Virus record (IMG/VR): IMGVR_UViG_3300032046_000001
Coordinates: 124,001 to 188,000 of that record
DNA: 64,000 bases
Direction: 5' to 3' (one strand)
Position 1 is the first letter of the stretch. Each line of letters begins with the position of its first letter. The notes beneath the pieces are model-generated. The model worked only from the letters and a program-made list of their open reading frames with translations, ran no database searches and was not told the DNA's origin. The position numbers were made by a program, and so were the translations under genes. Of the stretch, positions 2-21,417 are shown one piece after another.

Positions 2-1075
2 CGACAGAAAACATATAAAGTTTTAGCCAATGCTCTTTATGGTATTTTAGGAACTAATATTTATAGATTCTTTAATCTTGATATGGCATCTTCGATTACA
101 CTATCAGGACAAGAAGTTATTAAAAATTCAATTTTACATGTTGATAAGTATATGGATAATTTAAAGAGAGGAATTAAAGAAGATGTTGATATCACAATAT
201 CAAAAGAAAATGTCTACACTGATTGGATGGATGTGAAATTGAAATATATCATTACAAGCGATACCGATTCGATATTAGCGACATTATCAAAATTTATAAA
301 AAGTAAAGATTATGAAACATCAATTCAAGAAATGACAGATATCTGTTCGAGTATTCAAAATTTTATAAACAATCAAGTTGTTTCAAGAATAATAAATAGA
401 CATAATGTTCCAATTGATAAAAATCGATTAAAAATTAAAAATGAATTGATGTGTTCGAGAGGTTTATTTGTTAGCAAGAAACACTACGCACTCTATGTAA
501 TATTTCAAGAGAATAAACGTGTTGATGAAATGACAATTACTGGATTAGAAATAAAACGTCGTGATTTTTCATCATATACAAAAGATTGTATGAAAGAACT
601 TCTTGATATTATTTTAAAATCTGAAAAAATATCATTTAATCAAATTATGTCATATGTCAAGGAGAAAGAATATGAATTCATTAAAAGAATTCGATGTGGT
701 GATAAAACTGTTGCAAGACCAAGTGGTTGGAAGAAAAAATTAGATGAATATAAAGTTATTCCTCAAGGAATTTACGCAATGATGAACTGGAACGATTTAT
801 TATATAATTCATTCGAATGTGGTGTTCGTGGATATTTATTTAAAATTAATGGCATAGATATTTCAAAGACACCAAAGAATGTTATTGAGAATTATAATAA
901 AATATTTGTATCTGGTGGTAAAACTTTAGAAACCATATGTGTACCGGATGAAGAATCCAGACTTCCTGAATATTTTATCCCAGATATGAAAGAGATGTTA
1001 AAGTTTCACTGGATTGATCGTTACAGTCAGTTATTAGCACCAATTATTAAACCAGTTGAATTAGTAAAAATTTAA
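2..1075 (+). CDS. Family B DNA polymerase, C-terminal part (5' truncated by window)
   Basis: Frame is open from nt 2 (RQKTYKVLANALYG = motif B KxxxNxxYG) into the 83..1075 ORF, with SDTDS (motif C), KKHYA and GLEIKR motifs. Confidence 0.93.
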   Translation, partial: RQKTYKVLANALYGILGTNIYRFFNLDMASSITLSGQEVIKNSILHVDKYMDNLKRGIKEDVDITISKENVYTDWMDVKLKYIITSDTDSILATLSKFIKSKDYETSIQEMTDICSSIQNFINNQVVSRIINRHNVPIDKNRLKIKNELMCSRGLFVSKKHYALYVIFQENKRVDEMTITGLEIKRRDFSSYTKDCMKELLDIILKSEKISFNQIMSYVKEKEYEFIKRIRCGDKTVARPSGWKKKLDEYKVIPQGIYAMMNWNDLLYNSFECGVRGYLFKINGIDISKTPKNVIENYNKIFVSGGKTLETICVPDEESRLPEYFIPDMKEMLKFHWIDRYSQLLAPIIKPVELVKI

Positions 1076-1117: not shown

Positions 1118-1202
1118 AAAGAGAGATAGAGACTTAAGCTCGAAAAGAAGTATTCCGAAACTTCCTTCTCTCTTTATTATTCATTCGGAATGATTATCGG
1201 AG
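1118..1202 (+). ncRNA. Structured leader element, copy 1 (three-way junction plus pseudoknot)
   Basis: P1 1118-26/1167-75, P2 GAG/CTC, GAAAA linker, P3 GAAGT/ACTTC; loop ATTCCGAA is complementary to TTCGGAAT (1184-91) and TCGGA (1197-1201, over the SD). Confidence 0.75.
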
Positions 1203-1210
1203 ATTATAAA

Positions 1211-1816
1211 ATGAAAATTTATGAAAATTTAGATTTACAAGATTTAGATGTAGAAGTTTGGAGAACTATAAAAGAATACCCAGATTATTCTATTAGTAAT
1301 TTAGGAAGGGTTAAATCATTAAAATTTGGAAAAGAAAGAGTATTAAAACAAGGTAAAAATAGTAGAAAATATTTTTGTGTTGTTTTATCTAAAAATAAAA
1401 ATAAAAAAACAAAATTAGTTCATATACTTGTTTTTGAAATTTATAATAATTACAAATTAAAATCAAATGAGTGTATTCATCACAAAGATGGGAATAAAGA
1501 AAATAATTATTATAAAAATTTAGAAAGAATGACTAAATTAGATCACTTAAGTTTACACAACAAAGGAGAAAACAATCCTATGTTTGGAAAATATTTATCT
1601 ACAAAAACAAAAATGATGATAAGTAAAAATCATTTCGATAATAAAGGTGAAAATAATCCACATCATAAACTAACAGAAGAACAAGTTATCCAGATAAAAT
1701 TATTATTAAAAGAGGGAATATTAACTCAAGAAGAAATAGCTGATATATTTGGAGTTGGTAAAATGACAATTTCAAAAATAAAGAGAGGAAAATTATGGAA
1801 ACATGTGAAAATATGA
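1211..1816 (+). mobile_element. NUMOD4-HNH homing endonuclease with C-terminal HTH
   Basis: VWRTIKEYPDYSISNLGRVKS (NUMOD4), IHHKDGNKENN (HNH), KLTEEQVIQIKLLL...TQEEIADIFGV HTH; ATG 1211 follows GGAG (track ORF starts 1190). Confidence 0.88.
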
Positions 1817-2475
1817 AAAGTGATATGTCAATAAAAGCAATTGAGTGTTTTTCAACCTATCAAGGAGAAGGGTTATTTTCAGGAAAAAGAGTTGTATTAA
1901 TAAGATTCAAAGAATGTAATCGTGATTGTTGGTATTGTGATACAAAAAATAAAATGAAATATTATGAGGAAGGTGAATATAAATTAGAAGATATTCAAAA
2001 ATTGATAGATGTTGAATGTGCCAATCTTCTCATAACAGGTGGTGAAGTAACATTTGATAAAAATTTTCATCAAACAATATTATTATCAAATAAATTAAAA
2101 TATTCCGAGATGTATATTGAAACAAATGGTTATAAATTAGAGGAACTTTATCAATATGTAAAAAATAATAAAAATATTTATTTTGTCTATTCGCCAAAGA
2201 TCTTCAATGATAAAGATCTATTTAGTGACCCAACTGATGTCTTTATGAACTTGATTGGTAGAAATTTAATTATAAAAGTTTTATATGATGGAACTAATCC
2301 CTTTGTGGAAAAATATTTAAATAAGATTACTAAATACAGAGACAGTGTTTATTTACAACCTATGGGTTCAACCAAAGAAGATATTATTAAGAATATGAAA
2401 GTTGTTCTTGAGGCTGCGGATAAATATAAGTTTAATATTTCAAGTAGATTACATCTAATTCATGATTTCAGATAG
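1813..2475 (+). CDS. queE: 7-carboxy-7-deazaguanine synthase-like radical SAM protein
   Basis: FSTYQGEG, IRFKECNRDCWYCDT (CxxxCxxC), LITGGE, IETNG, SPK, YLQP, RLH; ATGA overlap with the upstream gene. Confidence 0.85.
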   Translation: MKSDMSIKAIECFSTYQGEGLFSGKRVVLIRFKECNRDCWYCDTKNKMKYYEEGEYKLEDIQKLIDVECANLLITGGEVTFDKNFHQTILLSNKLKYSEMYIETNGYKLEELYQYVKNNKNIYFVYSPKIFNDKDLFSDPTDVFMNLIGRNLIIKVLYDGTNPFVEKYLNKITKYRDSVYLQPMGSTKEDIIKNMKVVLEAADKYKFNISSRLHLIHDFR

Positions 2476-2484
2476 GAAAAGATT

Positions 2485-2676
2485 ATGTACAATGAACAAT
2501 CAGTATGCGACGGTTTGACTATTTATGAAAACTGTAAAGGTGAATGGCCGAATCCTCAGAAATTTAAAATTAAGATTGAATCAGGAATATGTGACATATG
2601 TAATGAAGAAAAAGAAATATTAGTATTTCTTGGAAATAATATATGTGTGGAGTGTATTAAAAAGGATAGTATATGA
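2485..2676 (+). CDS. Small Cys-rich hypothetical protein
   Basis: 63-aa ORF after GGAAAAG, two CxxC pairs, ATGA-coupled to the next frame. Confidence 0.55.
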   Translation: MYNEQSVCDGLTIYENCKGEWPNPQKFKIKIESGICDICNEEKEILVFLGNNICVECIKKDSI

Positions 2677-2829
2677 AATTTGAATTAACTTGTGATATAA
2701 ACTTTGAAGCTGATGATAAATACAACGCATTTTTTATTGAGTAATCATTTCAAATGTTTATATGAAGATGAAGACGATTTATATTTAGAATTTAATGGTG
2801 ATATAAATTTAAAACGGATTGATATATGA
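2673..2829 (+). pseudogene. Frameshifted small ORF
   Basis: ATG 2673 overlaps the previous stop. The frame stops after 23 codons, but a shift at the T6 run (2730-35) continues to TGA 2827-29, which overlaps the purM ATG. Confidence 0.5.
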
Positions 2830-3917
2830 ACTATAAAGATTCTGGTGTGGACACTAAATTAGAAACTATCGGATTAGACATTTTTATTGATAATATAAAA
2901 CAATCATTCAACAATATTCCATCAGGAGTTGGTAAAGTTTTTGATGATATTGGTTATTTCGCCAATGTCATCAATCTTACTAATGATATGAGTTTAGTTG
3001 TGTCAGCCGATGGAGTTGGAACTAAAGTTTTAATTGCCCAAATGATGAATAAATATGACACAATCGGAATTGATTGTATTGCCATGAATATAAATGATAT
3101 TATTTGTCTTGGTGCAAAACCTATCAGTTTTTTGGACTATATTGCCCTACAATCACCACAACTTGAGTTGATGGAACAACTATCTGAGGGACTATTAAAA
3201 GGTGCTCAGATGGTAGGTATAACGATTCCTGGTGGTGAAACAGCACAAGTACGAGATCTTATTAAAGGTGTTCGAAATAATTTTGGTTTTGATATAGCTG
3301 GTTTTGGTATTGGTATGGTTAATCCTGAGAAAATAATTAATGGAAGTGATATTAAAATTGGAGATTCTATAATCGGAATTGAAAGTAGCGGATTACATTC
3401 TAATGGTTATTCGTTAGCACGTAAAGTTTTACTCGACTCTAACAAATATACAGTAGATAGTTATATTCCAGAACTTCAAATGACTCTTGGTGAGGAACTT
3501 TTAAAACCAACAATTATATATTCATCAATGGTTAATGAAATATTACATGAAGATATTGATGTTAAGGCACTCATAAATATTACTGGTGATGGTATGATGA
3601 ATATGGTGAGAGTCAAGAGAGATAATATTCGATTTGCGATTGATTATCTACCAGATCCACCACCTATATTTAAATTAATTCAAAAGGAAGGAAATGTTTC
3701 AGATGCTGAGATGTATAATATTTTCAATATGGGAATTGGATTTGTAACAGTTGTTAGTCACGAAGATGAAGAAAAAATAAAAGACACTATAAGTCGATTT
3801 GACTTAAAGTGTTGGAAAATTGGAAGAATTGAAAAAGCGGATATAAAGAAAGTCAATATTTTCCCCAAAAGATTGATTGGATATCGAAGAGAATTAAATG
3901 AATGGGAAGATTTTTAA
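2826..3917 (+). CDS. purM: Phosphoribosylformylglycinamidine cyclo-ligase (AIR synthetase)
   Basis: YKDSGVD, SADGVGTK, IGIDCIAMNINDI, FLDYIA, GGETA, SSGLHSNGYSL, LLKPT, NITGDG, FNMGIG. Confidence 0.95.
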   Translation: MNYKDSGVDTKLETIGLDIFIDNIKQSFNNIPSGVGKVFDDIGYFANVINLTNDMSLVVSADGVGTKVLIAQMMNKYDTIGIDCIAMNINDIICLGAKPISFLDYIALQSPQLELMEQLSEGLLKGAQMVGITIPGGETAQVRDLIKGVRNNFGFDIAGFGIGMVNPEKIINGSDIKIGDSIIGIESSGLHSNGYSLARKVLLDSNKYTVDSYIPELQMTLGEELLKPTIIYSSMVNEILHEDIDVKALINITGDGMMNMVRVKRDNIRFAIDYLPDPPPIFKLIQKEGNVSDAEMYNIFNMGIGFVTVVSHEDEEKIKDTISRFDLKCWKIGRIEKADIKKVNIFPKRLIGYRRELNEWEDF

Positions 3918-3938
3918 AATTTAAAGGAGAAATAAAAA

Positions 3939-4226
3939 ATGAGAACATTAGAAGCAGTAAAAGACAAAATTATAGTAGAGTTGGACATCCCTCTTGAGAG
4001 TAAGACAGAATCTGGTCTTTTCATTCCAGAGACAGCAGTAAACGAACCACAGAAATATGGCAAGGTTGTCTCAATAGGTGAAGAGGTTTCTTATAGAGAC
4101 AAGTTGAATATTGGTGATATTATATCTTTTCATGGACGTGCTGGTCAGGATATAATCTTAAACCGTAAGATTTTCAAGGTGCTTCTTGAAGGTGAAGTTT
4201 ATGGAATCATAAAGGAAACTAATTAA
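3939..4226 (+). CDS. groES: Co-chaperonin GroES
   Basis: 95 aa; DKIIVE, KTESGLFIPETA mobile loop, G.VVSIGE, GDII.F; SD AAGGAG. Confidence 0.9.
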   Translation: MRTLEAVKDKIIVELDIPLESKTESGLFIPETAVNEPQKYGKVVSIGEEVSYRDKLNIGDIISFHGRAGQDIILNRKIFKVLLEGEVYGIIKETN

Positions 4227-4534
4227 TGAAAGAACTAACAACTGACAATTTTAATACAATTAAGTCAGGAGTTTCTATTGTAGATTTTTGGTCGGAGTTC
4301 TGTATGCAGTGTGTAGCACTGCAACGGACTCTCGATCAATTAGAAAAACAGTATACCCAAGTTAATTTTTATTCAGCTAATGTTGGACATTTATCTGACT
4401 TGGCTGGAGATTTAAATATAACAGCACTACCTACGATAATTTTCTTAAAAGATGGTGAAGAAAAACTACGAATTTTTGGAAACAGACCCCAAAAATATAT
4501 TGAAGATGAAATTAAAAAATTATTAGGAGAATAA
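4226..4534 (+). CDS. Thioredoxin
   Basis: VDFWSEFCMQC (CxxC), ITALPTIIFLKDGEE. Confidence 0.88.
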   Translation: MKELTTDNFNTIKSGVSIVDFWSEFCMQCVALQRTLDQLEKQYTQVNFYSANVGHLSDLAGDLNITALPTIIFLKDGEEKLRIFGNRPQKYIEDEIKKLLGE

Positions 4535-4535
4535 A

Positions 4536-5051
4536 ATGAGACGAACAATACTTATTAACGGTTCTGGTGGAACTGGAAAAGATGAACTTGTAAAGATGGC
4601 AAAAGATATTTTGGACATTCCTGTTTATAATATCTCATCTATTACACCTGTTATGGAAATGGCCAAACTTATGGGATGGGATGGAACAAAAGACGACAAG
4701 TCACGAAAACTTTTAAGTGATTTGAAAGATCTTTGGATCGAATTTAATAACGGTCCAATTAATAAACTGATTCAAACAATCGATGAAATTGATGATCAGT
4801 ACAATCCTCCAGATCCATATCTCATTTTCATTCATATTCGTGAACCATATGAAATTGAAAAGTTTAAGAGTAACTATCCAGATACAGCTACCGTTATGGT
4901 AAAAAGAAGTAAAACTACAAAATACAATAATGATAGTGATCAATTTGCAGATGAATACGCATATGACTATATAATTGAAAATGATGGGACACTAAACGAA
5001 CTGAAAGATGCAGTTGAAGTACTACTTAAAGATCTGAATATTTTAAAGTAG
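4536..5051 (+). CDS. P-loop kinase, dNMP-kinase-like
   Basis: INGSGGTGKD Walker A; C-terminal YDYIIENDGTLNELK typical of phage nucleotide kinases. Confidence 0.6.
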   Translation: MRRTILINGSGGTGKDELVKMAKDILDIPVYNISSITPVMEMAKLMGWDGTKDDKSRKLLSDLKDLWIEFNNGPINKLIQTIDEIDDQYNPPDPYLIFIHIREPYEIEKFKSNYPDTATVMVKRSKTTKYNNDSDQFADEYAYDYIIENDGTLNELKDAVEVLLKDLNILK

Positions 5052-6443
5052 TTGACGAAAGGACTACAATTGTCATCAGGTTATGTCGTGGCTGGATTTG
5101 AAGTCCTAACTACTATTATTGATAATTTCATTTTTAGTCCCAATTTCAATAATAATTTTACTCAACAAGACTTAATAAATTTTTTTGAAAATAGATGTAA
5201 TAAATTTCTGCATAGTTTTGGTTGTGATTTTAAAGGCAAGAAGAGATATGATAAGTTCATCAAGAAAAAAATATCTCTTCTTGATTATTGTAGAAATTCT
5301 GGTTTTTATGGTAATTCTGAATTTATATTAGATTCGGGTGGATTCCAGTTAAGTATTGGTATCCTCAATAAAGAAGAATCAACAGACTTACAGGATTTAT
5401 ATTATAACTTTCTAAATCAATACATTAATAAATATAATCGGGCATTTATTTTTGATATGCCTCCTGGTCCGGGTTGTACTGTCTTTAAAACATTCAAAGA
5501 TGTTTATGAAGGAAATAAACAATCATATCTTAGAGCTTCTGAATTCCCACAACATGTCAGAGACAAAATCATATATATTCATCATTTTAGGACACCAAAA
5601 TTATGGGATATATATACAAAAATTTTAGATGAAAATAATTTATTTGATAAATTTAAATATCATGGTACTGGCGGTATTGTTGCCAATCTATCGACTGATT
5701 TAGCTATTCCATGTATAATATATGTTTTACCTCTAATCACCCTTCTTAATAGAACTATAAAAACAAAAAGAAATTATTTAAACTTTCATGTATTGGGTGG
5801 TGCTGGTTTTCGAGATATTTTGTTTTATGAAATGTTCCGAATTCATATTAAAGAAAAACACAATATCGAACTAAATATAACTTACGACTCATCTGGTATT
5901 TTCAAGGCATTAATGATTGCTAAGTTTATTCACATAATAAAAGATGACTCTGTGTTTAAAGTAAATATTGGAACAATGAATCTTGAAAAAAGACATAAAA
6001 ATTCAAATATTCAGATTATCGATTTATATCGTGAGGGAATAAATAAATTCTCAGATGATAATAATTTCAAACGAATTAATTTAGAAAATATTTATGATTC
6101 GACCACAGGAACTTTCTATGAAGATATTCGTTTGTATAGTATGTTGTGTGTGTTGAATAATTACTCAGAAATAACACAATATTTTCAGAATATAGTCGAG
6201 GAATTATATACACTCTATAAGAACAAACAGTATGAAGGATTTAATGAAAAAATTGAATTAATAACCAGACGACTAAATAATGAAAAAATTACAAGAAAAC
6301 AAAATGCCAAATCTGCAAGTTTAATTAAGTCTCTCGACATGTTAACAGACTTAGATGAGGAGTATTGTAAATATCTGGTTGATAAATTTTTAATGAAAGA
6401 TGAATTTACAGAATTAGAGAAAAAGAAGTTATATACGATTTAA
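5052..6443 (+). CDS. tRNA-guanine transglycosylase fold protein (DpdA/TGT-like)
   Basis: ILDSGGFQ, FDMPP, GTGG, FHVLG, TYDSS motifs in TGT order; queE-like gene 2.6 kb upstream; TTG start. Confidence 0.7.
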   Translation: MTKGLQLSSGYVVAGFEVLTTIIDNFIFSPNFNNNFTQQDLINFFENRCNKFLHSFGCDFKGKKRYDKFIKKKISLLDYCRNSGFYGNSEFILDSGGFQLSIGILNKEESTDLQDLYYNFLNQYINKYNRAFIFDMPPGPGCTVFKTFKDVYEGNKQSYLRASEFPQHVRDKIIYIHHFRTPKLWDIYTKILDENNLFDKFKYHGTGGIVANLSTDLAIPCIIYVLPLITLLNRTIKTKRNYLNFHVLGGAGFRDILFYEMFRIHIKEKHNIELNITYDSSGIFKALMIAKFIHIIKDDSVFKVNIGTMNLEKRHKNSNIQIIDLYREGINKFSDDNNFKRINLENIYDSTTGTFYEDIRLYSMLCVLNNYSEITQYFQNIVEELYTLYKNKQYEGFNEKIELITRRLNNEKITRKQNAKSASLIKSLDMLTDLDEEYCKYLVDKFLMKDEFTELEKKKLYTI

Positions 6444-6486: not shown

Positions 6487-7947
6487 TTGATCACTGACTC
6501 TTTTTTAAATACTTGCTTCTCAGTCATTTTCTGTCAATCAAATATTAAAAAGAATAAATCGCTATATCGAGATATTGTAGAAATTTTAAATATTGATAGT
6601 ACGATGAAAAGTATTGATATCCCCATAAGTCTAAGAAATAAAATAGAGATTTTAAATAAGATTTGTGAGATGAAATTAAATGATAAAAATGATGATAATA
6701 TTATTGATAGTCTATCTTTTAGTAATAAATACTCCCAATTAATTCCAATTCTTGAATCAAAATTAAGTGAGTGTATAAATGATAGTGATATAGTAGATCA
6801 CGTTCATCAAATAAAATTAAGAAAGAAATTAAATTCGTTACTGACAAATCAAGATAAAATAAATAAAATTTTAAATAGCGTCAAGGAGTCATCTTTTGAT
6901 TCTATTGATGATTTAATTTGTGATTATGAAGATACCATAAAACTATTATACGTTGATATGATGAATAACAATAGAAGTGCTGGTATAGAGTCAATATCAT
7001 CAATTGATTTATGTAAAGATGATTATACTCCGGTGCTATCAAAAATAATTGAAAAGTATGATGAAGTTAACACAACACCAACTGGATATGACCTATTAGA
7101 CACTCAGATATTCTATGGTGGATTTGAAAAATCTAGATTATATATTTTTGCAGGTTGTGCTGGTTCTGGAAAATCAACACTATTGTGTAATTTGATATTG
7201 AGTTCAATCAGAAAAGAATCAACTGATATATCAAAACCAAAAGTTTATGTTTATATAACCTTAGAAAATATGATTGATGAATCATTTGTTAGAATCTATC
7301 AAGCTATGTTTGATAAAACAAAAGTTGAAGTTCTTAATGATATAAATCAGGGTGTTGATATTAGAGTCCGAATTTTAAATGAATTGGAAAAAACTAATTC
7401 AAATATAATAATGAAATATTTTACACCAGGAACTATCAGTACAACTGACGTAATGATGGTATTAGATGATGTTGCTGAAGAATATGGTAAAGAAAATATA
7501 TTAGGATTATATTTAGACTATTTAGATGTTTTGAGAAATGATATAAAATATGAACGACCAGATCTTGAAATTGGTCATATGGCTTTATCTCTTAAAGCAT
7601 TAGCGGTAAATTATAATCTTCCAGTTATAACAGTGACACATCTCAATAGTTCATCATATGGACAAGATGCGGTTAAGAATTTAAGTCTTGGTCAAATGTC
7701 AAAGTCAGTTCAAAAAATAGAACATGGTGATTTTATATGTCTAATGGTAAGAGATCCGATGAATGATACAATAATCCATATGAAGATTGGTAAAAATAGA
7801 TCAGGACAGGCTAATAATATATCAATTGATTTTAAAGTCGATTTGAGTAAATCAAAATTTATTGACTGTTTTTGGCCTAATAAAAGTAATAGCCAAAATT
7901 TTACAAATGATTCATTCATTGGATATGGGGAAAATAATCTTTTTTAA
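6487..7947 (+). CDS. Replicative helicase (DnaB/T4 gp41-like)
   Basis: TPTGYDLLD, GGFEKSRLYIFAGCAGSGKS (Walker A), YITLE, LDYLD (Walker B), IGKNRSG. Confidence 0.88.
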   Translation: MITDSFLNTCFSVIFCQSNIKKNKSLYRDIVEILNIDSTMKSIDIPISLRNKIEILNKICEMKLNDKNDDNIIDSLSFSNKYSQLIPILESKLSECINDSDIVDHVHQIKLRKKLNSLLTNQDKINKILNSVKESSFDSIDDLICDYEDTIKLLYVDMMNNNRSAGIESISSIDLCKDDYTPVLSKIIEKYDEVNTTPTGYDLLDTQIFYGGFEKSRLYIFAGCAGSGKSTLLCNLILSSIRKESTDISKPKVYVYITLENMIDESFVRIYQAMFDKTKVEVLNDINQGVDIRVRILNELEKTNSNIIMKYFTPGTISTTDVMMVLDDVAEEYGKENILGLYLDYLDVLRNDIKYERPDLEIGHMALSLKALAVNYNLPVITVTHLNSSSYGQDAVKNLSLGQMSKSVQKIEHGDFICLMVRDPMNDTIIHMKIGKNRSGQANNISIDFKVDLSKSKFIDCFWPNKSNSQNFTNDSFIGYGENNLF

Positions 7948-20464: not shown

Positions 20465-21079
20465 CTACCAAAGCCGACCGAGTTTTGTCACTTTCCGATT
20501 TAAACGGTACGTGGCATGTGTAATAGTTCTCAATCTCGACTTCAAAAGTTCATTTTCATCCGAAATTATTTTAAATTCTTTATTGAGTTTCATAAGATCA
20601 TATCTTAAGGATCTCATAGTTTCATTAAATCTGACATTTACTGGTGGTTTACCATTTTCTCTTGAACAGATATCAATTAAATCACCGACGATATTATGAT
20701 CCCTAATTATTGTTTTAATAAACTCACCACTAATAGTTATTAAATCCGGTAAAGTGACAATGAATAAACATACAGATGTTTCAACAGCGATATTATAACC
20801 AGTTCGTAGGTTAAAAGTATTACCGTGTTCAGTTTCTTTTTTGTGATTGAACTTAGAAACACCAACACGAAGTTTACCGTTTTCTTGTTGGACAAGCACA
20901 ATACAACCAACTGGTAACACGTCAGGGATCATAACGACTTGATCTTTTTTAGTACCTGGGGATAGAGAATTACAGTGAGTGGTAACATTTGATTCTTTTT
21001 TAACTAAACAACTATCTTTAATCCGAGTAACCACATGAACAAAATGATCAAACTTTTCCGGTGGGTTGATATTCTTCAT
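20465..21079 (-). CDS. Hypothetical protein, paralogue of 19926..20420
   Basis: As above, plus a C-terminal coiled coil. Confidence 0.7.
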   Translation of the reverse strand: MKNINPPEKFDHFVHVVTRIKDSCLVKKESNVTTHCNSLSPGTKKDQVVMIPDVLPVGCIVLVQQENGKLRVGVSKFNHKKETEHGNTFNLRTGYNIAVETSVCLFIVTLPDLITISGEFIKTIIRDHNIVGDLIDICSRENGKPPVNVRFNETMRSLRYDLMKLNKEFKIISDENELLKSRLRTITHATYRLNRKVTKLGRLW

Positions 21080-21417
21080 AATTTTTTCCGTAACGAATCA
21101 ATGAAACATTCTGTACTGGCATCACAGACTATCTCTCCATTTTTACCTTCACCTTCTCTGATGACTTTACCATTCTCCAGTATTTGCACAGAAACTTTAT
21201 CATCTTTTGATTGCCATTTGATACTAAACTTGGAACCAACTCGTGGACTAAAGGTATTTGAATAATAACCATCAACTTCAATTTTTTCATCATATCCATC
21301 AGAAGTAATGGTTACTGTTGAAGATCCTGTAATATTGACTATGGTATCAACCGTTCGTTCAGGGGTACTACATGAACATAAAACAAACAACATAATAAAT
21401 ATCAAAATTTTTTTCAT
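21076..21417 (-). CDS. Putative lipoprotein
   Basis: MKKILIFIMLFVLCSC signal peptide with lipobox; SD GGAGG. Confidence 0.7.
   Translation of the reverse strand: MKKILIFIMLFVLCSCSTPERTVDTIVNITGSSTVTITSDGYDEKIEVDGYYSNTFSPRVGSKFSIKWQSKDDKVSVQILENGKVIREGEGKNGEIVCDASTECFIDSLRKKL

What the first reader, a model, noticed from the sequence alone, without database searches (positions are those of the whole stretch)
1813..6443. QueE plus TGT/DpdA-like protein embedded in the replication module
Seen: a QueE-like radical SAM gene and a 463-aa TGT-fold protein lie between PolB and the helicase. Established: phage QueE/DpdA pairs insert 7-deazaguanine derivatives into DNA against restriction. Inference: deazaguanine DNA modification by a long, divergent DpdA. 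FolE, QueD and QueC are not in this window, and tRNA targeting cannot be excluded.
Basis: partly seen in the sequence, partly recalled or inferred. Interest (0 to 1): 0.6.

Follow-up and report, generated by a model that had tools for sequence, protein, structure and literature searches.

The report
Jumbo phage QueE plus new DpdA-like enzyme
A 312-kb soil or sediment phage carries, between its DNA polymerase and helicase genes, a real QueE gene and an unnamed enzyme that looks like the phage proteins known to swap guanine in DNA for a 7-deazaguanine base, but it has lost the other pathway genes that its relatives keep.

Summary
Window 1795-2475 encodes a genuine QueE. It keeps the QGEG, CX3CX2C-DT and GGE motifs, and its model matches the three solved QueE structures best (Z 16-18). 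Window 5052-6443 (likely start 5070) encodes a TGT-superfamily TIM barrel. Its top structural matches are ArcTGT, bacterial TGT, DpdA, QTRT2 and Cap10 (Z 13.6-18.2).

Pfam, NCBIfam and PADLOC do not recognise the TGT-like protein, and its own PHROGs scan gives only a partial match. It belongs to a large unnamed viral family of at least 330 clusters at 50% identity. Across 107 representatives D94, H246 and D279 are invariant and D135 is kept in 106; no cysteine is conserved.

A deep profile of the family matches phage DpdA2 best (hhalign 94%, P 1e-7), with four motifs in register. It matches DpdA1 next and does not match DpdA3.

The order PolB, QueE, GroES, TGT-like, DnaB holds in 36 of 38 related loci. 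Related genomes also carry FolE2, QueD and QueC, but no QueF or ArcS. This complete genome lacks all three at collinear sites.

The best reading is a new DpdA2-like DNA 7-deazaguanine transglycosylase with a host-dependent, reduced pathway. Neither the DNA target nor the inserted base has been tested.

The parts
1795..2475 (+). QueE (7-carboxy-7-deazaguanine synthase), 226 aa; an alternative start is at 1813
   Evidence: phrog_2076 E 1.7e-29. About 28% identity over 94-95% of its length to QueE of Queuovirinae phages. The only PDB sequence hit is E. coli QueE 6nhl. Invariant in 31 homologues: Q23 G24 E25, R37, C41/C45/C48-D49-T50, G82 G83 (E84 in at least 90%), E109/N111/G112, R218. AF2 model pLDDT 92.5; top matches are QueE 4njg Z 17.9, 5tgs Z 17.9 and 6nhl Z 15.9, above PFL-AE at 14.4. 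NCBIfam QueE models score far below their cut-offs (55 bits against 200-300), so it is a divergent member.
5052..6443 (+). DpdA-like TGT-superfamily transglycosylase, 463-aa ORF; the likely start is TTG 5070, giving 457 aa
   Evidence: No Pfam, NCBIfam or PADLOC hit. AF2 model pLDDT 89.8. Foldseek: the top 50 matches are all TGT. VIA Z: ArcTGT 18.2, bacterial TGT 16.3, DpdA 7ui4 14.3, QTRT2 14.1, Cap10 13.6, generic TIM barrels 12 or less. phrog_887, the family of Seurat DpdA1, hits residues about 87-182 at E 6.4e-7 and hits 19 of 40 family members. D94, H246 and D279 are invariant and D135 is kept in 106 of 107 representatives. hhalign to DpdA2: 94%, P 1e-7.
2..1075 (+). Context: C-terminal part of family B DNA polymerase (1077-aa ORF that starts before the window)
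   Evidence: Pfam DNA_pol_B 4.9e-20. Conserved upstream of QueE in 36 of 38 related loci.
1190..1816 (+). Context: HNH/NUMOD homing endonuclease inserted between PolB and QueE
   Evidence: NUMOD4, HNH_3 and NUMOD3 domains. No counterpart in any of the 38 related loci.
2826..3917 (+). Context, not a conserved part: PurM (AIR synthetase)
   Evidence: TIGR00878 342 bits, above the cut-off. Absent at this place in all 38 related loci.
3939..4226 (+). Context: GroES-like co-chaperonin, the conserved neighbour of QueE
   Evidence: Cpn10 1.3e-12. Present in 35 of 38 loci.
4536..5051 (+). Context, not conserved: dNMP-kinase-like protein that ends one base before the DpdA-like ORF
   Evidence: phrog_139 2.5e-11. 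No counterpart in related loci.
6487..7947 (+). Context: DnaB-like replicative helicase downstream of the DpdA-like gene
   Evidence: DnaB_C 2.5e-18 and phrog_19 1.2e-42. Present in 35 of 38 loci.

Best explanation
The 463-aa protein is a DNA guanine transglycosylase of the DpdA kind. It belongs to a previously unnamed subfamily that is remotely related to DpdA2 of T4-like vibriophages.

Inferred by analogy with TGT and DpdA: D279 attacks C1' of a guanine nucleotide flipped out of phage DNA. D94 acts as general acid/base. D135, with H246 or H178, reads the base edge. The guanine is then exchanged for a 7-deazaguanine base.

QueE supplies 7-carboxy-7-deazaguanine (CDG) from CPH4. Relatives make CPH4 themselves with FolE2 and QueD, and process CDG further with a QueC. 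This genome has lost those three genes. It must therefore take CPH4 from the host's queuosine pathway. It then either lets host QueC finish preQ0 or inserts CDG itself.

The expected result is phage DNA shielded from restriction and other DNA-targeting defences.

Shown here: gene identities, fold, conserved residues, profile similarity and gene linkage. Inferred: DNA as the target, the identity of the base, the extent of replacement, and the protective role.
For: 1. QueE is genuine.

2. The TGT-like protein has the TGT-superfamily fold. The five best PDB representatives are all TGT-family proteins (Z 13.6-18.2), above generic TIM barrels.

3. The three aspartates reported as invariant in TGT and DpdA (PMC10164549) have conserved counterparts. 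D94 and D279 are invariant and D135 is kept in 106 of 107 diverse representatives.

4. The motifs DSGGFQ, FD, FHxLG and YDSS align in register with DSGGLQ, FDE, VHMLG and YDSS of nt-1 DpdA2 (hhalign 94%, P 1e-7, 179 columns). That enzyme inserts dPreQ0 into plasmid DNA when expressed alone in E. coli (PMC10516641). The match to DpdA1 is 76%, P 2e-5. phrog_887, the DpdA1 family, also hits the protein.

5. The architecture resembles DpdA and not tRNA TGT. The model's N-terminus aligns to residue 2 of DpdA 7ui4 but to residue 36-39 of Z. mobilis TGT and eukaryotic QTRT1 (30-31 in the archaeal enzyme), so the N-terminal lid is missing. After the nucleophile come a short helix, a beta-hairpin and a helical bundle, as described for Ins8 of DpdA.

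6. Linkage: the order PolB, QueE, GroES, TGT-like, DnaB holds in 36 of 38 loci. Among 18 related records, 9 carry FolE2, 12 carry QueD and 13 carry QueC. None carries QueF above cut-off or ArcS. A pathway that ends at preQ0, ADG or CDG fits DNA-type enzymes and does not fit bacterial tRNA queuosine, which needs preQ1.

7. QueE is under purifying selection in the window's own sublineage.
Against: - There is no biochemical or mass-spectrometric evidence.
- The runs that hold this DNA are kept as contigs only, so no modification signal can be read.
- This genome lacks FolE2, QueD and QueC, so substrate supply rests on an unknown host.
- Structural Z is higher to tRNA enzymes (16-18) than to bacterial DpdA (14.3).
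- HMM-level similarity to DpdA1 and DpdA2 is weak: 9-25 bits, measured on small databases.
- The Zn site CXCX2CX22H of TGT and bacterial DpdA is absent. It is also absent from the phage DpdA1 and DpdA2 sequences I read.
- The phage has tRNA-His(GTG) and tRNA-Asp(GTC), which are classical TGT substrates.
Confidence: 0.65

Rival explanations
1. The enzyme is a tRNA-guanine transglycosylase. It acts on host tRNAs or on the phage's own GUN-anticodon tRNAs, and QueE boosts the queuosine precursor supply to tune translation.
For: Best structural Z is to ArcTGT and bacterial TGT. The genome encodes tRNA-His(GTG) and tRNA-Asp(GTC). Hutinet et al. 2019 raise this role for phages that carry pathway genes without DpdA.
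Against: There is no Pfam TGT hit. The N-terminal lid and the Zn site are absent. The nucleophile motif YDSS is that of phage DpdA1 and DpdA2. The relatives lack QueF, so no preQ1 is made for a bacterial-type TGT. They also lack ArcS. The gene is a core gene of the replication module.
Confidence: 0.12
2. In this particular genome the pair is a remnant. After FolE2, QueD and QueC were lost, little or no deazaguanine is made and the DNA is unmodified or only sparsely modified.
For: All three genes are missing at collinear positions compared with the complete relative G011.
Against: Both proteins keep every invariant residue of their families. QueE shows 24 of 32 listed differences at third codon positions and only 5 residue changes against a 95%-identical strain. 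Many known phages carry DpdA alone and are thought to use host preQ0.
Confidence: 0.12
3. The enzyme uses the TGT fold on another acceptor. One possibility is a protein, as with Cap10 deazaguanylation in type IV CBASS. Another is free deoxynucleotides, so that a modified dGTP analogue is incorporated by PolB during replication.
For: Cap10 is among the five best structural matches at Z 13.6. Protein deazaguanylation by Cap9 and Cap10 is documented (bioRxiv 10.1101/2025.04.06.647259). The gene sits beside a dNMP-kinase-like gene in this genome and between the polymerase and helicase genes.
Against: No PADLOC Cap10 or DpdA model hits any of 40 family members. The dNMP-kinase neighbour is not conserved. 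The profile similarity points to DpdA2 and DpdA1. Hutinet et al. 2023 argue for post-replicative insertion in all phages known to be modified.
Confidence: 0.08

Closest known systems
DpdA2 of Vibrio phage nt-1 and KVP40-like phages (Hutinet et al. 2019, 2023)
   Same: Nearly the same length (464 and 459 aa against 463). Found in T4-like large phages. The motifs DSGG[FL]Q, FD, [FV]HxLG and YDSS are collinear. No CXCX2C zinc motif. Not found by the Pfam TGT model. hhalign 94%, P 1e-7. A KVP40-like DpdA2 aligns to the family's top representative at 25.6% identity over 312 residues.
   Different: BLAST, tblastn and the family HMM do not link the window's protein to nt-1 DpdA2. In nt-1 the gene sits inside a FolE-DpdA2-QueC cluster. 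Here it sits between the dNMP-kinase-like and DnaB genes of the replication module, and the other pathway genes are scattered in relatives or absent here.
DpdA1 of Queuovirinae (phage 9g, CAjan, Seurat; phrog_887)
   Same: DSG[GA]F and DSS motifs and a shared profile match. The QueE proteins are about 28% identical over their full length.
   Different: DpdA1 has about 306 aa and lacks the C-terminal helical domain. Those phages carry FolE type I, QueD, QueE and QueC in one cluster.
DpdA3 of Cellulophaga phage phiST, Campylobacter phage CP220 and Flavobacterium phage immuto
   Same: A TGT-like gene close to the polymerase gene in phages with partial pathways that stop at CDG. These are the reported cases of complete guanine replacement.
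   Different: DpdA3 has 259 aa and the motifs DNGAG and DSC. I found no detectable profile similarity (hhalign 1.4%) and it belongs to other PHROGs.
Bacterial DpdA (Salmonella Montevideo, PDB 7ui4)
   Same: TIM barrel without an N-terminal lid, the same three aspartates at similar positions (D95/D130/D256 against D94/D135/D279), and an insertion with a beta-hairpin and helical bundle after the nucleophile.
   Different: Z is only 14.3. Bacterial DpdA has the Zn site and needs the DpdB ATPase. No PADLOC model, DpdA or otherwise, matches.
tRNA-guanine transglycosylases (bacterial TGT, archaeal ArcTGT, eukaryotic QTRT1; PF01702)
   Same: The best structural matches (Z 16-19 over 300-330 residues) and the DSGGFQ motif.
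   Different: No PF01702 hit. The first 30-39 residues that the TGT structures carry ahead of the barrel are missing. There is no Zn site and the nucleophile motif differs.

Membership tests
QueE (7-carboxy-7-deazaguanine synthase) | Radical SAM cluster motif followed by D-T (Mg site), and the N-terminal QGEG substrate-binding motif | tested here: met
   C41-x3-C45-x2-C48-D49-T50 and Q23-G24-E25 are invariant in 31 homologues. The same stretch aligns to E. coli QueE 6nhl. The functional assignment of these residues comes from my knowledge of the B. multivorans QueE structure.
QueE (7-carboxy-7-deazaguanine synthase) | QueE fold, closer to QueE than to other small radical SAM enzymes | tested here: met
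   VIA Z 17.9 (4njg, rmsd 2.6 over 184 residues), 17.9 (5tgs) and 15.9 (6nhl), against 14.4 for PFL-AE and 13.3 for viperin.
QueE (7-carboxy-7-deazaguanine synthase) | Score above the curated NCBIfam equivalog cut-offs | tested here: not met
   The best score is 54.9 bits against a cut-off of 260. I take this as divergence, because phage QueE proteins align over the full length.
TGT superfamily | (beta/alpha)8 barrel of the TGT type | tested here: met
   The top 50 Foldseek matches are all TGT. In the search not guided by Foldseek, the five best representatives are ArcTGT, TGT, DpdA, QTRT2 and Cap10.
TGT superfamily | Three invariant active-site aspartates: general acid/base, base recognition and nucleophile | tested here: met
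   D94 107/107, D135 106/107 and D279 107/107. Their equivalence to the catalytic residues comes from the hhalign register with DpdA2 and from motif positions, not from a residue-level superposition.
TGT superfamily | Structural Zn site CXCX2CX22H | tested here: not met
   There is no CXCX2C motif and no cysteine conserved across 107 representatives. The motif is also missing from Seurat DpdA1 and from all 10 DpdA2-type sequences.
tRNA-specific TGT (PF01702) | [quoted passage not shown] | tested here: not met
   No PF01702 match to the protein or in six frames of the genome, while 14 of 14 control genomes ring. Model residue 5-10 aligns to residue 36-41 of bacterial TGT.
Phage DpdA (DNA 7-deazaguanine transglycosylase) | Sequence or profile similarity to validated DpdA subfamilies | tested here: met
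   hhalign gives DpdA2 94%, P 1e-7, and DpdA1 76%, P 2e-5. The known subfamilies score only P 0.007-0.11 among themselves with the same shallow profiles. phrog_887 hits 19 of 40 family members.
Phage DpdA (DNA 7-deazaguanine transglycosylase) | Genomic association with preQ0/CDG synthesis genes | tested here: met
   QueE lies within a few kb in 36 of 38 loci. Among 18 related records, FolE2 is in 9, QueD in 12 and QueC in 13. In this genome only QueE is present.
Phage DpdA (DNA 7-deazaguanine transglycosylase) | Exchange of guanine in DNA for a 7-deazaguanine base | not testable with these tools
   This needs LC-MS/MS or raw long-read signal. All runs that hold this DNA are kept as contigs.
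DpdA2 subfamily in the strict sense | Retrievable from nt-1 DpdA2 by BLAST- or HMM-level similarity | tested here: not met
   tblastn of the protein against 50,697 phage records gives no match even at E 10. The family HMM does not find nt-1 DpdA2 in six frames. The wide HMM gives it only 9 bits.
Cap10 (type IV CBASS deazaguanylation) | Match to the PADLOC Cap10 model, with Cap9 and CD-NTase neighbours | tested here: not met
   No PADLOC model of a TGT-family protein matches any of 40 members. The neighbours are replication genes.

The most novel reading that the evidence does not exclude
This protein family could be a fifth phage DpdA subfamily. It would act as a core replisome-associated enzyme, as conserved as PolB and DnaB in a whole clade of uncultivated T4-like jumbo phages, and would replace guanine extensively. 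In this genome the system would be reduced to two genes, QueE and DpdA-like, that turn host CPH4 into CDG and insert CDG itself into DNA. That would give a genetic explanation for dCDG in DNA, whose source is still open for Sulfolobus virus STSV-2 (PMC10516641).
Probability: 0.15. Interest if true: 0.75.

Novelty: new variant of a known kind. Interest (0 to 1): 0.58.

Why it matters
7-deazaguanine DNA modifications protect phages from restriction enzymes and, in vitro, from Cas9. Hutinet et al. 2023 treat DpdA as the signature gene for such modification.

This family escapes Pfam, NCBIfam, PADLOC and BLAST, and the PHROGs scan gives it only a partial match. Yet it has hundreds of 50%-identity clusters in viral metagenomes and sits in the replication core of large soil and sediment phages. 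Surveys based on the known subfamilies DpdA1-4 would therefore probably miss a large share of modified phage genomes.

The clade also uses FolE2 in place of FolE type I. Most of its QueC proteins are short and lack the cysteine cluster. One complete genome keeps only QueE. This gives a natural series for asking which steps a phage must encode itself and which base the enzyme accepts.

Tried and rejected
Searches that found nothing for the 463-aa protein:
- megablast of the locus and tblastn of the protein against 50,697 phage records gave no match, even at E 10.
- Pfam and NCBIfam scans of the protein found nothing, and PHROGs nothing below E 0.001. PADLOC on the protein and its family found nothing relevant.
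- A profile search of PDB sequences found nothing.
- The family HMM searched in six frames on nt-1, phiST and Seurat found nothing.

Profile comparisons that were too shallow:
- hhalign of the shallow 40-sequence profile against single DpdA sequences or small DpdA alignments gave only P 8e-4 to 0.9.
- Only the deeper profile, built after the full HMM search, gave a clear answer. I ran that large search only after the word search and the family scans had left the protein open.

Leads that were rejected:
- A weak QueC hit in the genome (15 bits) turned out to be NAD synthase NadE.
- I looked for non-orthologous replacements at the places where G011 has QueC, QueD and FolE2. I found only small ORFs, a GmrSD_N-like ORF, an epimerase, a CoaE/PPAT fusion and a second radical SAM protein.

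Limits of the read data:
- DNA modification cannot be read from the sequencing data, because every run that holds the stretch is kept as contigs.
- Read laying was given 4649 letters. No genetic code other than table 11 was used.

Full report
**What is there**

The window is bases 124,001-188,000 of a 312,420-base virus record with direct terminal repeats. The record is rated complete and has 28.6% G+C. The finding's stretch holds, all on the + strand:

- the end of a 1077-aa family B polymerase
- an HNH/NUMOD homing endonuclease
- a 226-aa radical SAM protein
- a 63-aa ORF
- PurM
- GroES
- a thioredoxin
- a dNMP-kinase-like protein
- a 463-aa ORF
- a DnaB-like helicase

The 463-aa ORF most likely starts at TTG 5070, behind an AAAGGA ribosome-binding site. 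That start gives the 457-aa protein on record. QueE may start at 1795, which has an AGAGGA ribosome-binding site. It may instead start at 1813, which overlaps the HNH stop codon.

**QueE**

- The radical SAM protein matches phrog_2076, "QueE-like" (1.7e-29).
- It aligns over 94-95% of its length, at about 28% identity, with the QueE proteins of Queuovirinae and related phages.
- Its only sequence match in the PDB is E. coli QueE, over the motif that carries QGEG and the cluster cysteines.
- In 31 homologues from related phages, QGE, R37, C-x3-C-x2-C-D-T, the two glycines of GGE, E-x-N-G, S-P-K and R218 are invariant. E84 and H220 are kept in at least 90%.
- The AlphaFold model (pLDDT 92.5) matches the three solved QueE structures best (Z 17.9, 17.9 and 15.9). 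PFL-activating enzyme and viperin follow at 14.4 and 13.3.
- It fails the NCBIfam equivalog cut-offs by a wide margin, so it is a divergent QueE.
- A soil contig about 95% identical, from another study, differs at 32 listed positions in the gene. Of these, 24 are third codon positions and only 5 change a residue. The gene is under purifying selection.

**The 463-aa protein**

Pfam, NCBIfam and PADLOC do not recognise it, and a PHROGs scan of the protein finds nothing below E 0.001. tblastn against 50,697 phage genomes is empty. Yet it has 589 word-search homologues, all unnamed. A full HMM search found 330 representative clusters at E 1e-3 or better, and 221 at 1e-10 or better. Most are 420-480 aa long.

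The AlphaFold model is confident (pLDDT 89.8, pTM 0.89).

- In Foldseek the first 50 PDB matches are all tRNA-guanine transglycosylases.
- In the aligner that does not lean on Foldseek, the five best of 48,161 representatives are all TGT-family proteins:

| Match | Z |
|---|---|
| ArcTGT | 18.2 |
| bacterial TGT | 16.3 |
| DNA preQ0 insertase DpdA (7ui4) | 14.3 |
| QTRT2 | 14.1 |
| Cap10 | 13.6 |
| unrelated TIM barrels | 12 or less |

- Among viral models, the matches include nt-1 R9TGF0 and several phage "queuine tRNA-ribosyltransferases".
- The ESM Atlas neighbours are viral clusters, one of which is tagged TGT-like.

Across 107 full-length representatives D94 (in DSGGFQ), H246 (in FHxLG) and D279 (in YDSS) are invariant, and D135 (in FDxPP) is kept in 106. 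No cysteine is conserved. TGTs and bacterial DpdA share three invariant aspartates: a general acid/base, a base reader and a nucleophile. In Salmonella DpdA these are D95, D130 and D256 (PMC10164549). The positions here nearly coincide.

**Which kind of TGT**

Established phage DpdAs also escape the Pfam TGT model. In a six-frame search, neither Seurat (DpdA1), phiST (DpdA3) nor nt-1 (DpdA2) gives a hit, although all 14 control genomes do. The lack of a Pfam hit therefore says nothing against a DpdA role.

- phrog_887 is the family of Seurat DpdA1. It matches 19 of the 40 aligned family members (best 3e-7). It also matches residues about 87-182 of the window's protein (6.4e-7).
- I located nt-1 DpdA2 as the 464-aa ORF between FolE and QueC.
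- A family profile built from the 107 representatives aligns to a DpdA2 profile at 94% probability and P 1e-7 over 179 columns. The DpdA2 profile came from nt-1, two KVP40-like phages and seven more distant sequences.
- In that alignment DSGGFQ matches DSGGLQ, FD matches FDE, FHxLG matches VHMLG, and ITYDSS matches ISYDSS.
- The match to DpdA1 is 76%, P 2e-5. The match to DpdA3 is 1.4%.
- With the same shallow profiles, the recognised subfamilies score only P 0.007-0.11 against each other. This family is therefore at least as close to DpdA2 and DpdA1 as those are to one another.
- It is not DpdA2 in the strict sense, because BLAST and plain HMM searches do not connect them.

Two architectural points also favour a DpdA-like enzyme over a tRNA enzyme:

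- The model starts the barrel at about residue 11. It aligns from residue 2 of DpdA 7ui4 but from residue 36-39 of Z. mobilis TGT and QTRT1 (30-31 in ArcTGT), so the N-terminal lid is missing.
- After the nucleophile strand come a short helix, a beta-hairpin and a helical bundle. This is the layout described for Ins8 of DpdA.

The zinc motif of TGT and bacterial DpdA is absent. It is equally absent from the phage DpdA1 and DpdA2 sequences I read.

**Context in relatives**

In 38 related loci (37 from IMG/VR and one NCBI assembly, with the TGT-like protein at 42-55% identity), the order PolB, QueE, GroES, TGT-like, DnaB holds in 36. One exception, L025, has too little upstream sequence to judge.

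QueE and the TGT-like gene are as widely kept as PolB, DnaB, the T4-type portal and the prohead protease. PurM, the thioredoxin, the dNMP kinase, the HNH gene and the 63-aa ORF are peculiar to this genome.

Searching 18 whole records gave these counts:

| Family | Records with a hit (of 18) |
|---|---|
| QueD (with the CxxxHGH motif) | 12 |
| QueC | 13 |
| FolE2, PF02649 (196-224 bits) | 9 |
| FolE type I | 0 |
| QueF above cut-off | 0 |
| ArcS core domain | 0 |

Among the eight records rated at least 70% complete, all but the window's genome have FolE2 and QueD, and six have QueC. The complete relative G011 (277 kb) has all of them.

The family is thus tied to a pathway that ends at preQ0, ADG or CDG. 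That is the pattern of Hutinet's second group of DpdA phages.

**The window's own genome is different**

It has none of FolE2, QueD or QueC.

- The Pfam six-frame searches are empty, apart from a 15-bit hit that is NadE.
- The relatives' own QueD and QueC proteins find nothing by phmmer or tblastn.
- The genes that flank QueC and QueD in G011 have collinear counterparts here, and those around FolE2 less clearly, but the three genes themselves are missing.
- Nothing with a related fold signature sits in their place.

This phage therefore keeps only QueE and the transglycosylase.

**How it most likely works**

Shown here: a real QueE, a TGT-fold enzyme with the catalytic constellation, its profile kinship to validated DNA transglycosylases, and its linkage to deazaguanine synthesis.

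Inferred:
- The enzyme exchanges guanine in phage DNA for a 7-deazaguanine base.
- CPH4 comes from the host's FolE and QueD.
- QueE makes CDG. Then either host QueC completes preQ0, or CDG (or ADG) is inserted directly.
- The modification protects against restriction.

I put 0.65 on the DNA-transglycosylase reading. The rivals are:

| Rival | Confidence | Main point for | Main point against |
|---|---|---|---|
| tRNA enzyme | 0.12 | The phage has tRNA-His(GTG) and tRNA-Asp(GTC) | The lid, the zinc site and QueF are missing |
| Remnant pathway in this genome | 0.12 | FolE2, QueD and QueC are lost | Conservation and purifying selection |
| Another acceptor: protein as with Cap10, or free nucleotides | 0.08 | Cap10 is a structural match; a dNMP-kinase-like gene is adjacent | See |

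**Novelty**

The kind of system is known. The family is not. No library names it, no isolate genome in the phage collection holds it, and no paper in the searched library names a DpdA subfamily beyond DpdA4.

The new points are its size and its placement in the replication core of uncultivated T4-like jumbo phages from soil and sediment. The clade's use of FolE2 and this genome's reduction to QueE alone are also new. I rate it a new variant of a known kind.

**Limits**

- I could not superpose coordinates residue by residue. The residue equivalences rest on profile alignment and motif positions.
- The DpdA1, DpdA2 and DpdA3 profiles were shallow (3-10 sequences).
- DpdA4 and bacterial DpdA were compared only through PADLOC, which found nothing, and through structure.
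- E-values from my small local databases are flattering, and the bit scores are modest.
- The host is unknown.

Noticed in passing
window 1190-1816 (+); also L002:1739-2404 (-) = G000 about 266,430-267,095: HNH/NUMOD4/NUMOD3 homing endonucleases. One is wedged between PolB and QueE and overlaps the start of QueE. It has no counterpart in 38 related loci. A second, similar one lies next to NadE.
   Followed up: partly
window 2826-3917 (+): A PurM gene that passes the NCBIfam equivalog cut-off (342 bits) sits between QueE and GroES. Relatives have no PurM at this place. It may be a purine-supply auxiliary gene rather than part of the pathway.
   Followed up: partly
window 2485-2676 (+): The 63-aa ORF has no family hit and no homologue in related loci. 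In a 95%-identical soil strain, the stretch 2475-2825 is replaced by 63 other letters.
   Followed up: partly
L086:1495-2046, L087:1489-2043, L088:1468-2046 (relatives G003, G002, G014): The QueC proteins of most relatives have only 183-192 aa. They end before the C-terminal cysteine cluster that Seurat QueC and the QueC of L085 carry. They might stop at the amide (ADG), as proposed for QueC* of Campylobacter phages.
   Followed up: partly
G002-G006, G008, G011-G013 (for example L090, L091): The clade uses GTP cyclohydrolase IB (FolE2, PF02649, 196-224 bits) and never FolE type I. Hutinet et al.'s phage surveys list FolE type I (EC 3.5.4.16).
   Followed up: yes
L096:40-486 (-) = G000 about 299,739-300,185: A 148-aa ORF with a GmrSD_N (DUF262) domain, next to an NAD-dependent epimerase/dehydratase, lies where the relative G011 has QueD. 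GmrSD-type enzymes cut modified DNA, so a fragment of one in a phage is odd.
   Followed up: no
L097:3420-4412 (-) = G000 about 260,219-261,211; L097:1166-2332 (-): A second radical SAM protein of 330 aa with unknown role, and a fused cytidylyltransferase-like/CoaE (dephospho-CoA kinase) protein of 388 aa.
   Followed up: no
L003:16824-18569 (+) and 20636-21380 (+): In a 252-kb relative, proteins with a DUF7487 domain flank the portal and protease genes, and one of them also has a Mom domain. They are candidates for a further DNA modification.
   Followed up: no
G000 246,518-250,052 (-), outside the window: A cluster of eight tRNA genes: Ser-TGA, His-GTG, Lys-TTT, Asp-GTC, Leu-CAA, Trp-CCA, Ile-TAT and Glu-TTC. 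Two of them have GUN anticodons.
   Followed up: partly
L002:979-1749 (-) = G000 about 265,670-266,440: A phage-encoded NAD synthase NadE (197 bits). It caused the false weak QueC signal.
   Followed up: yes
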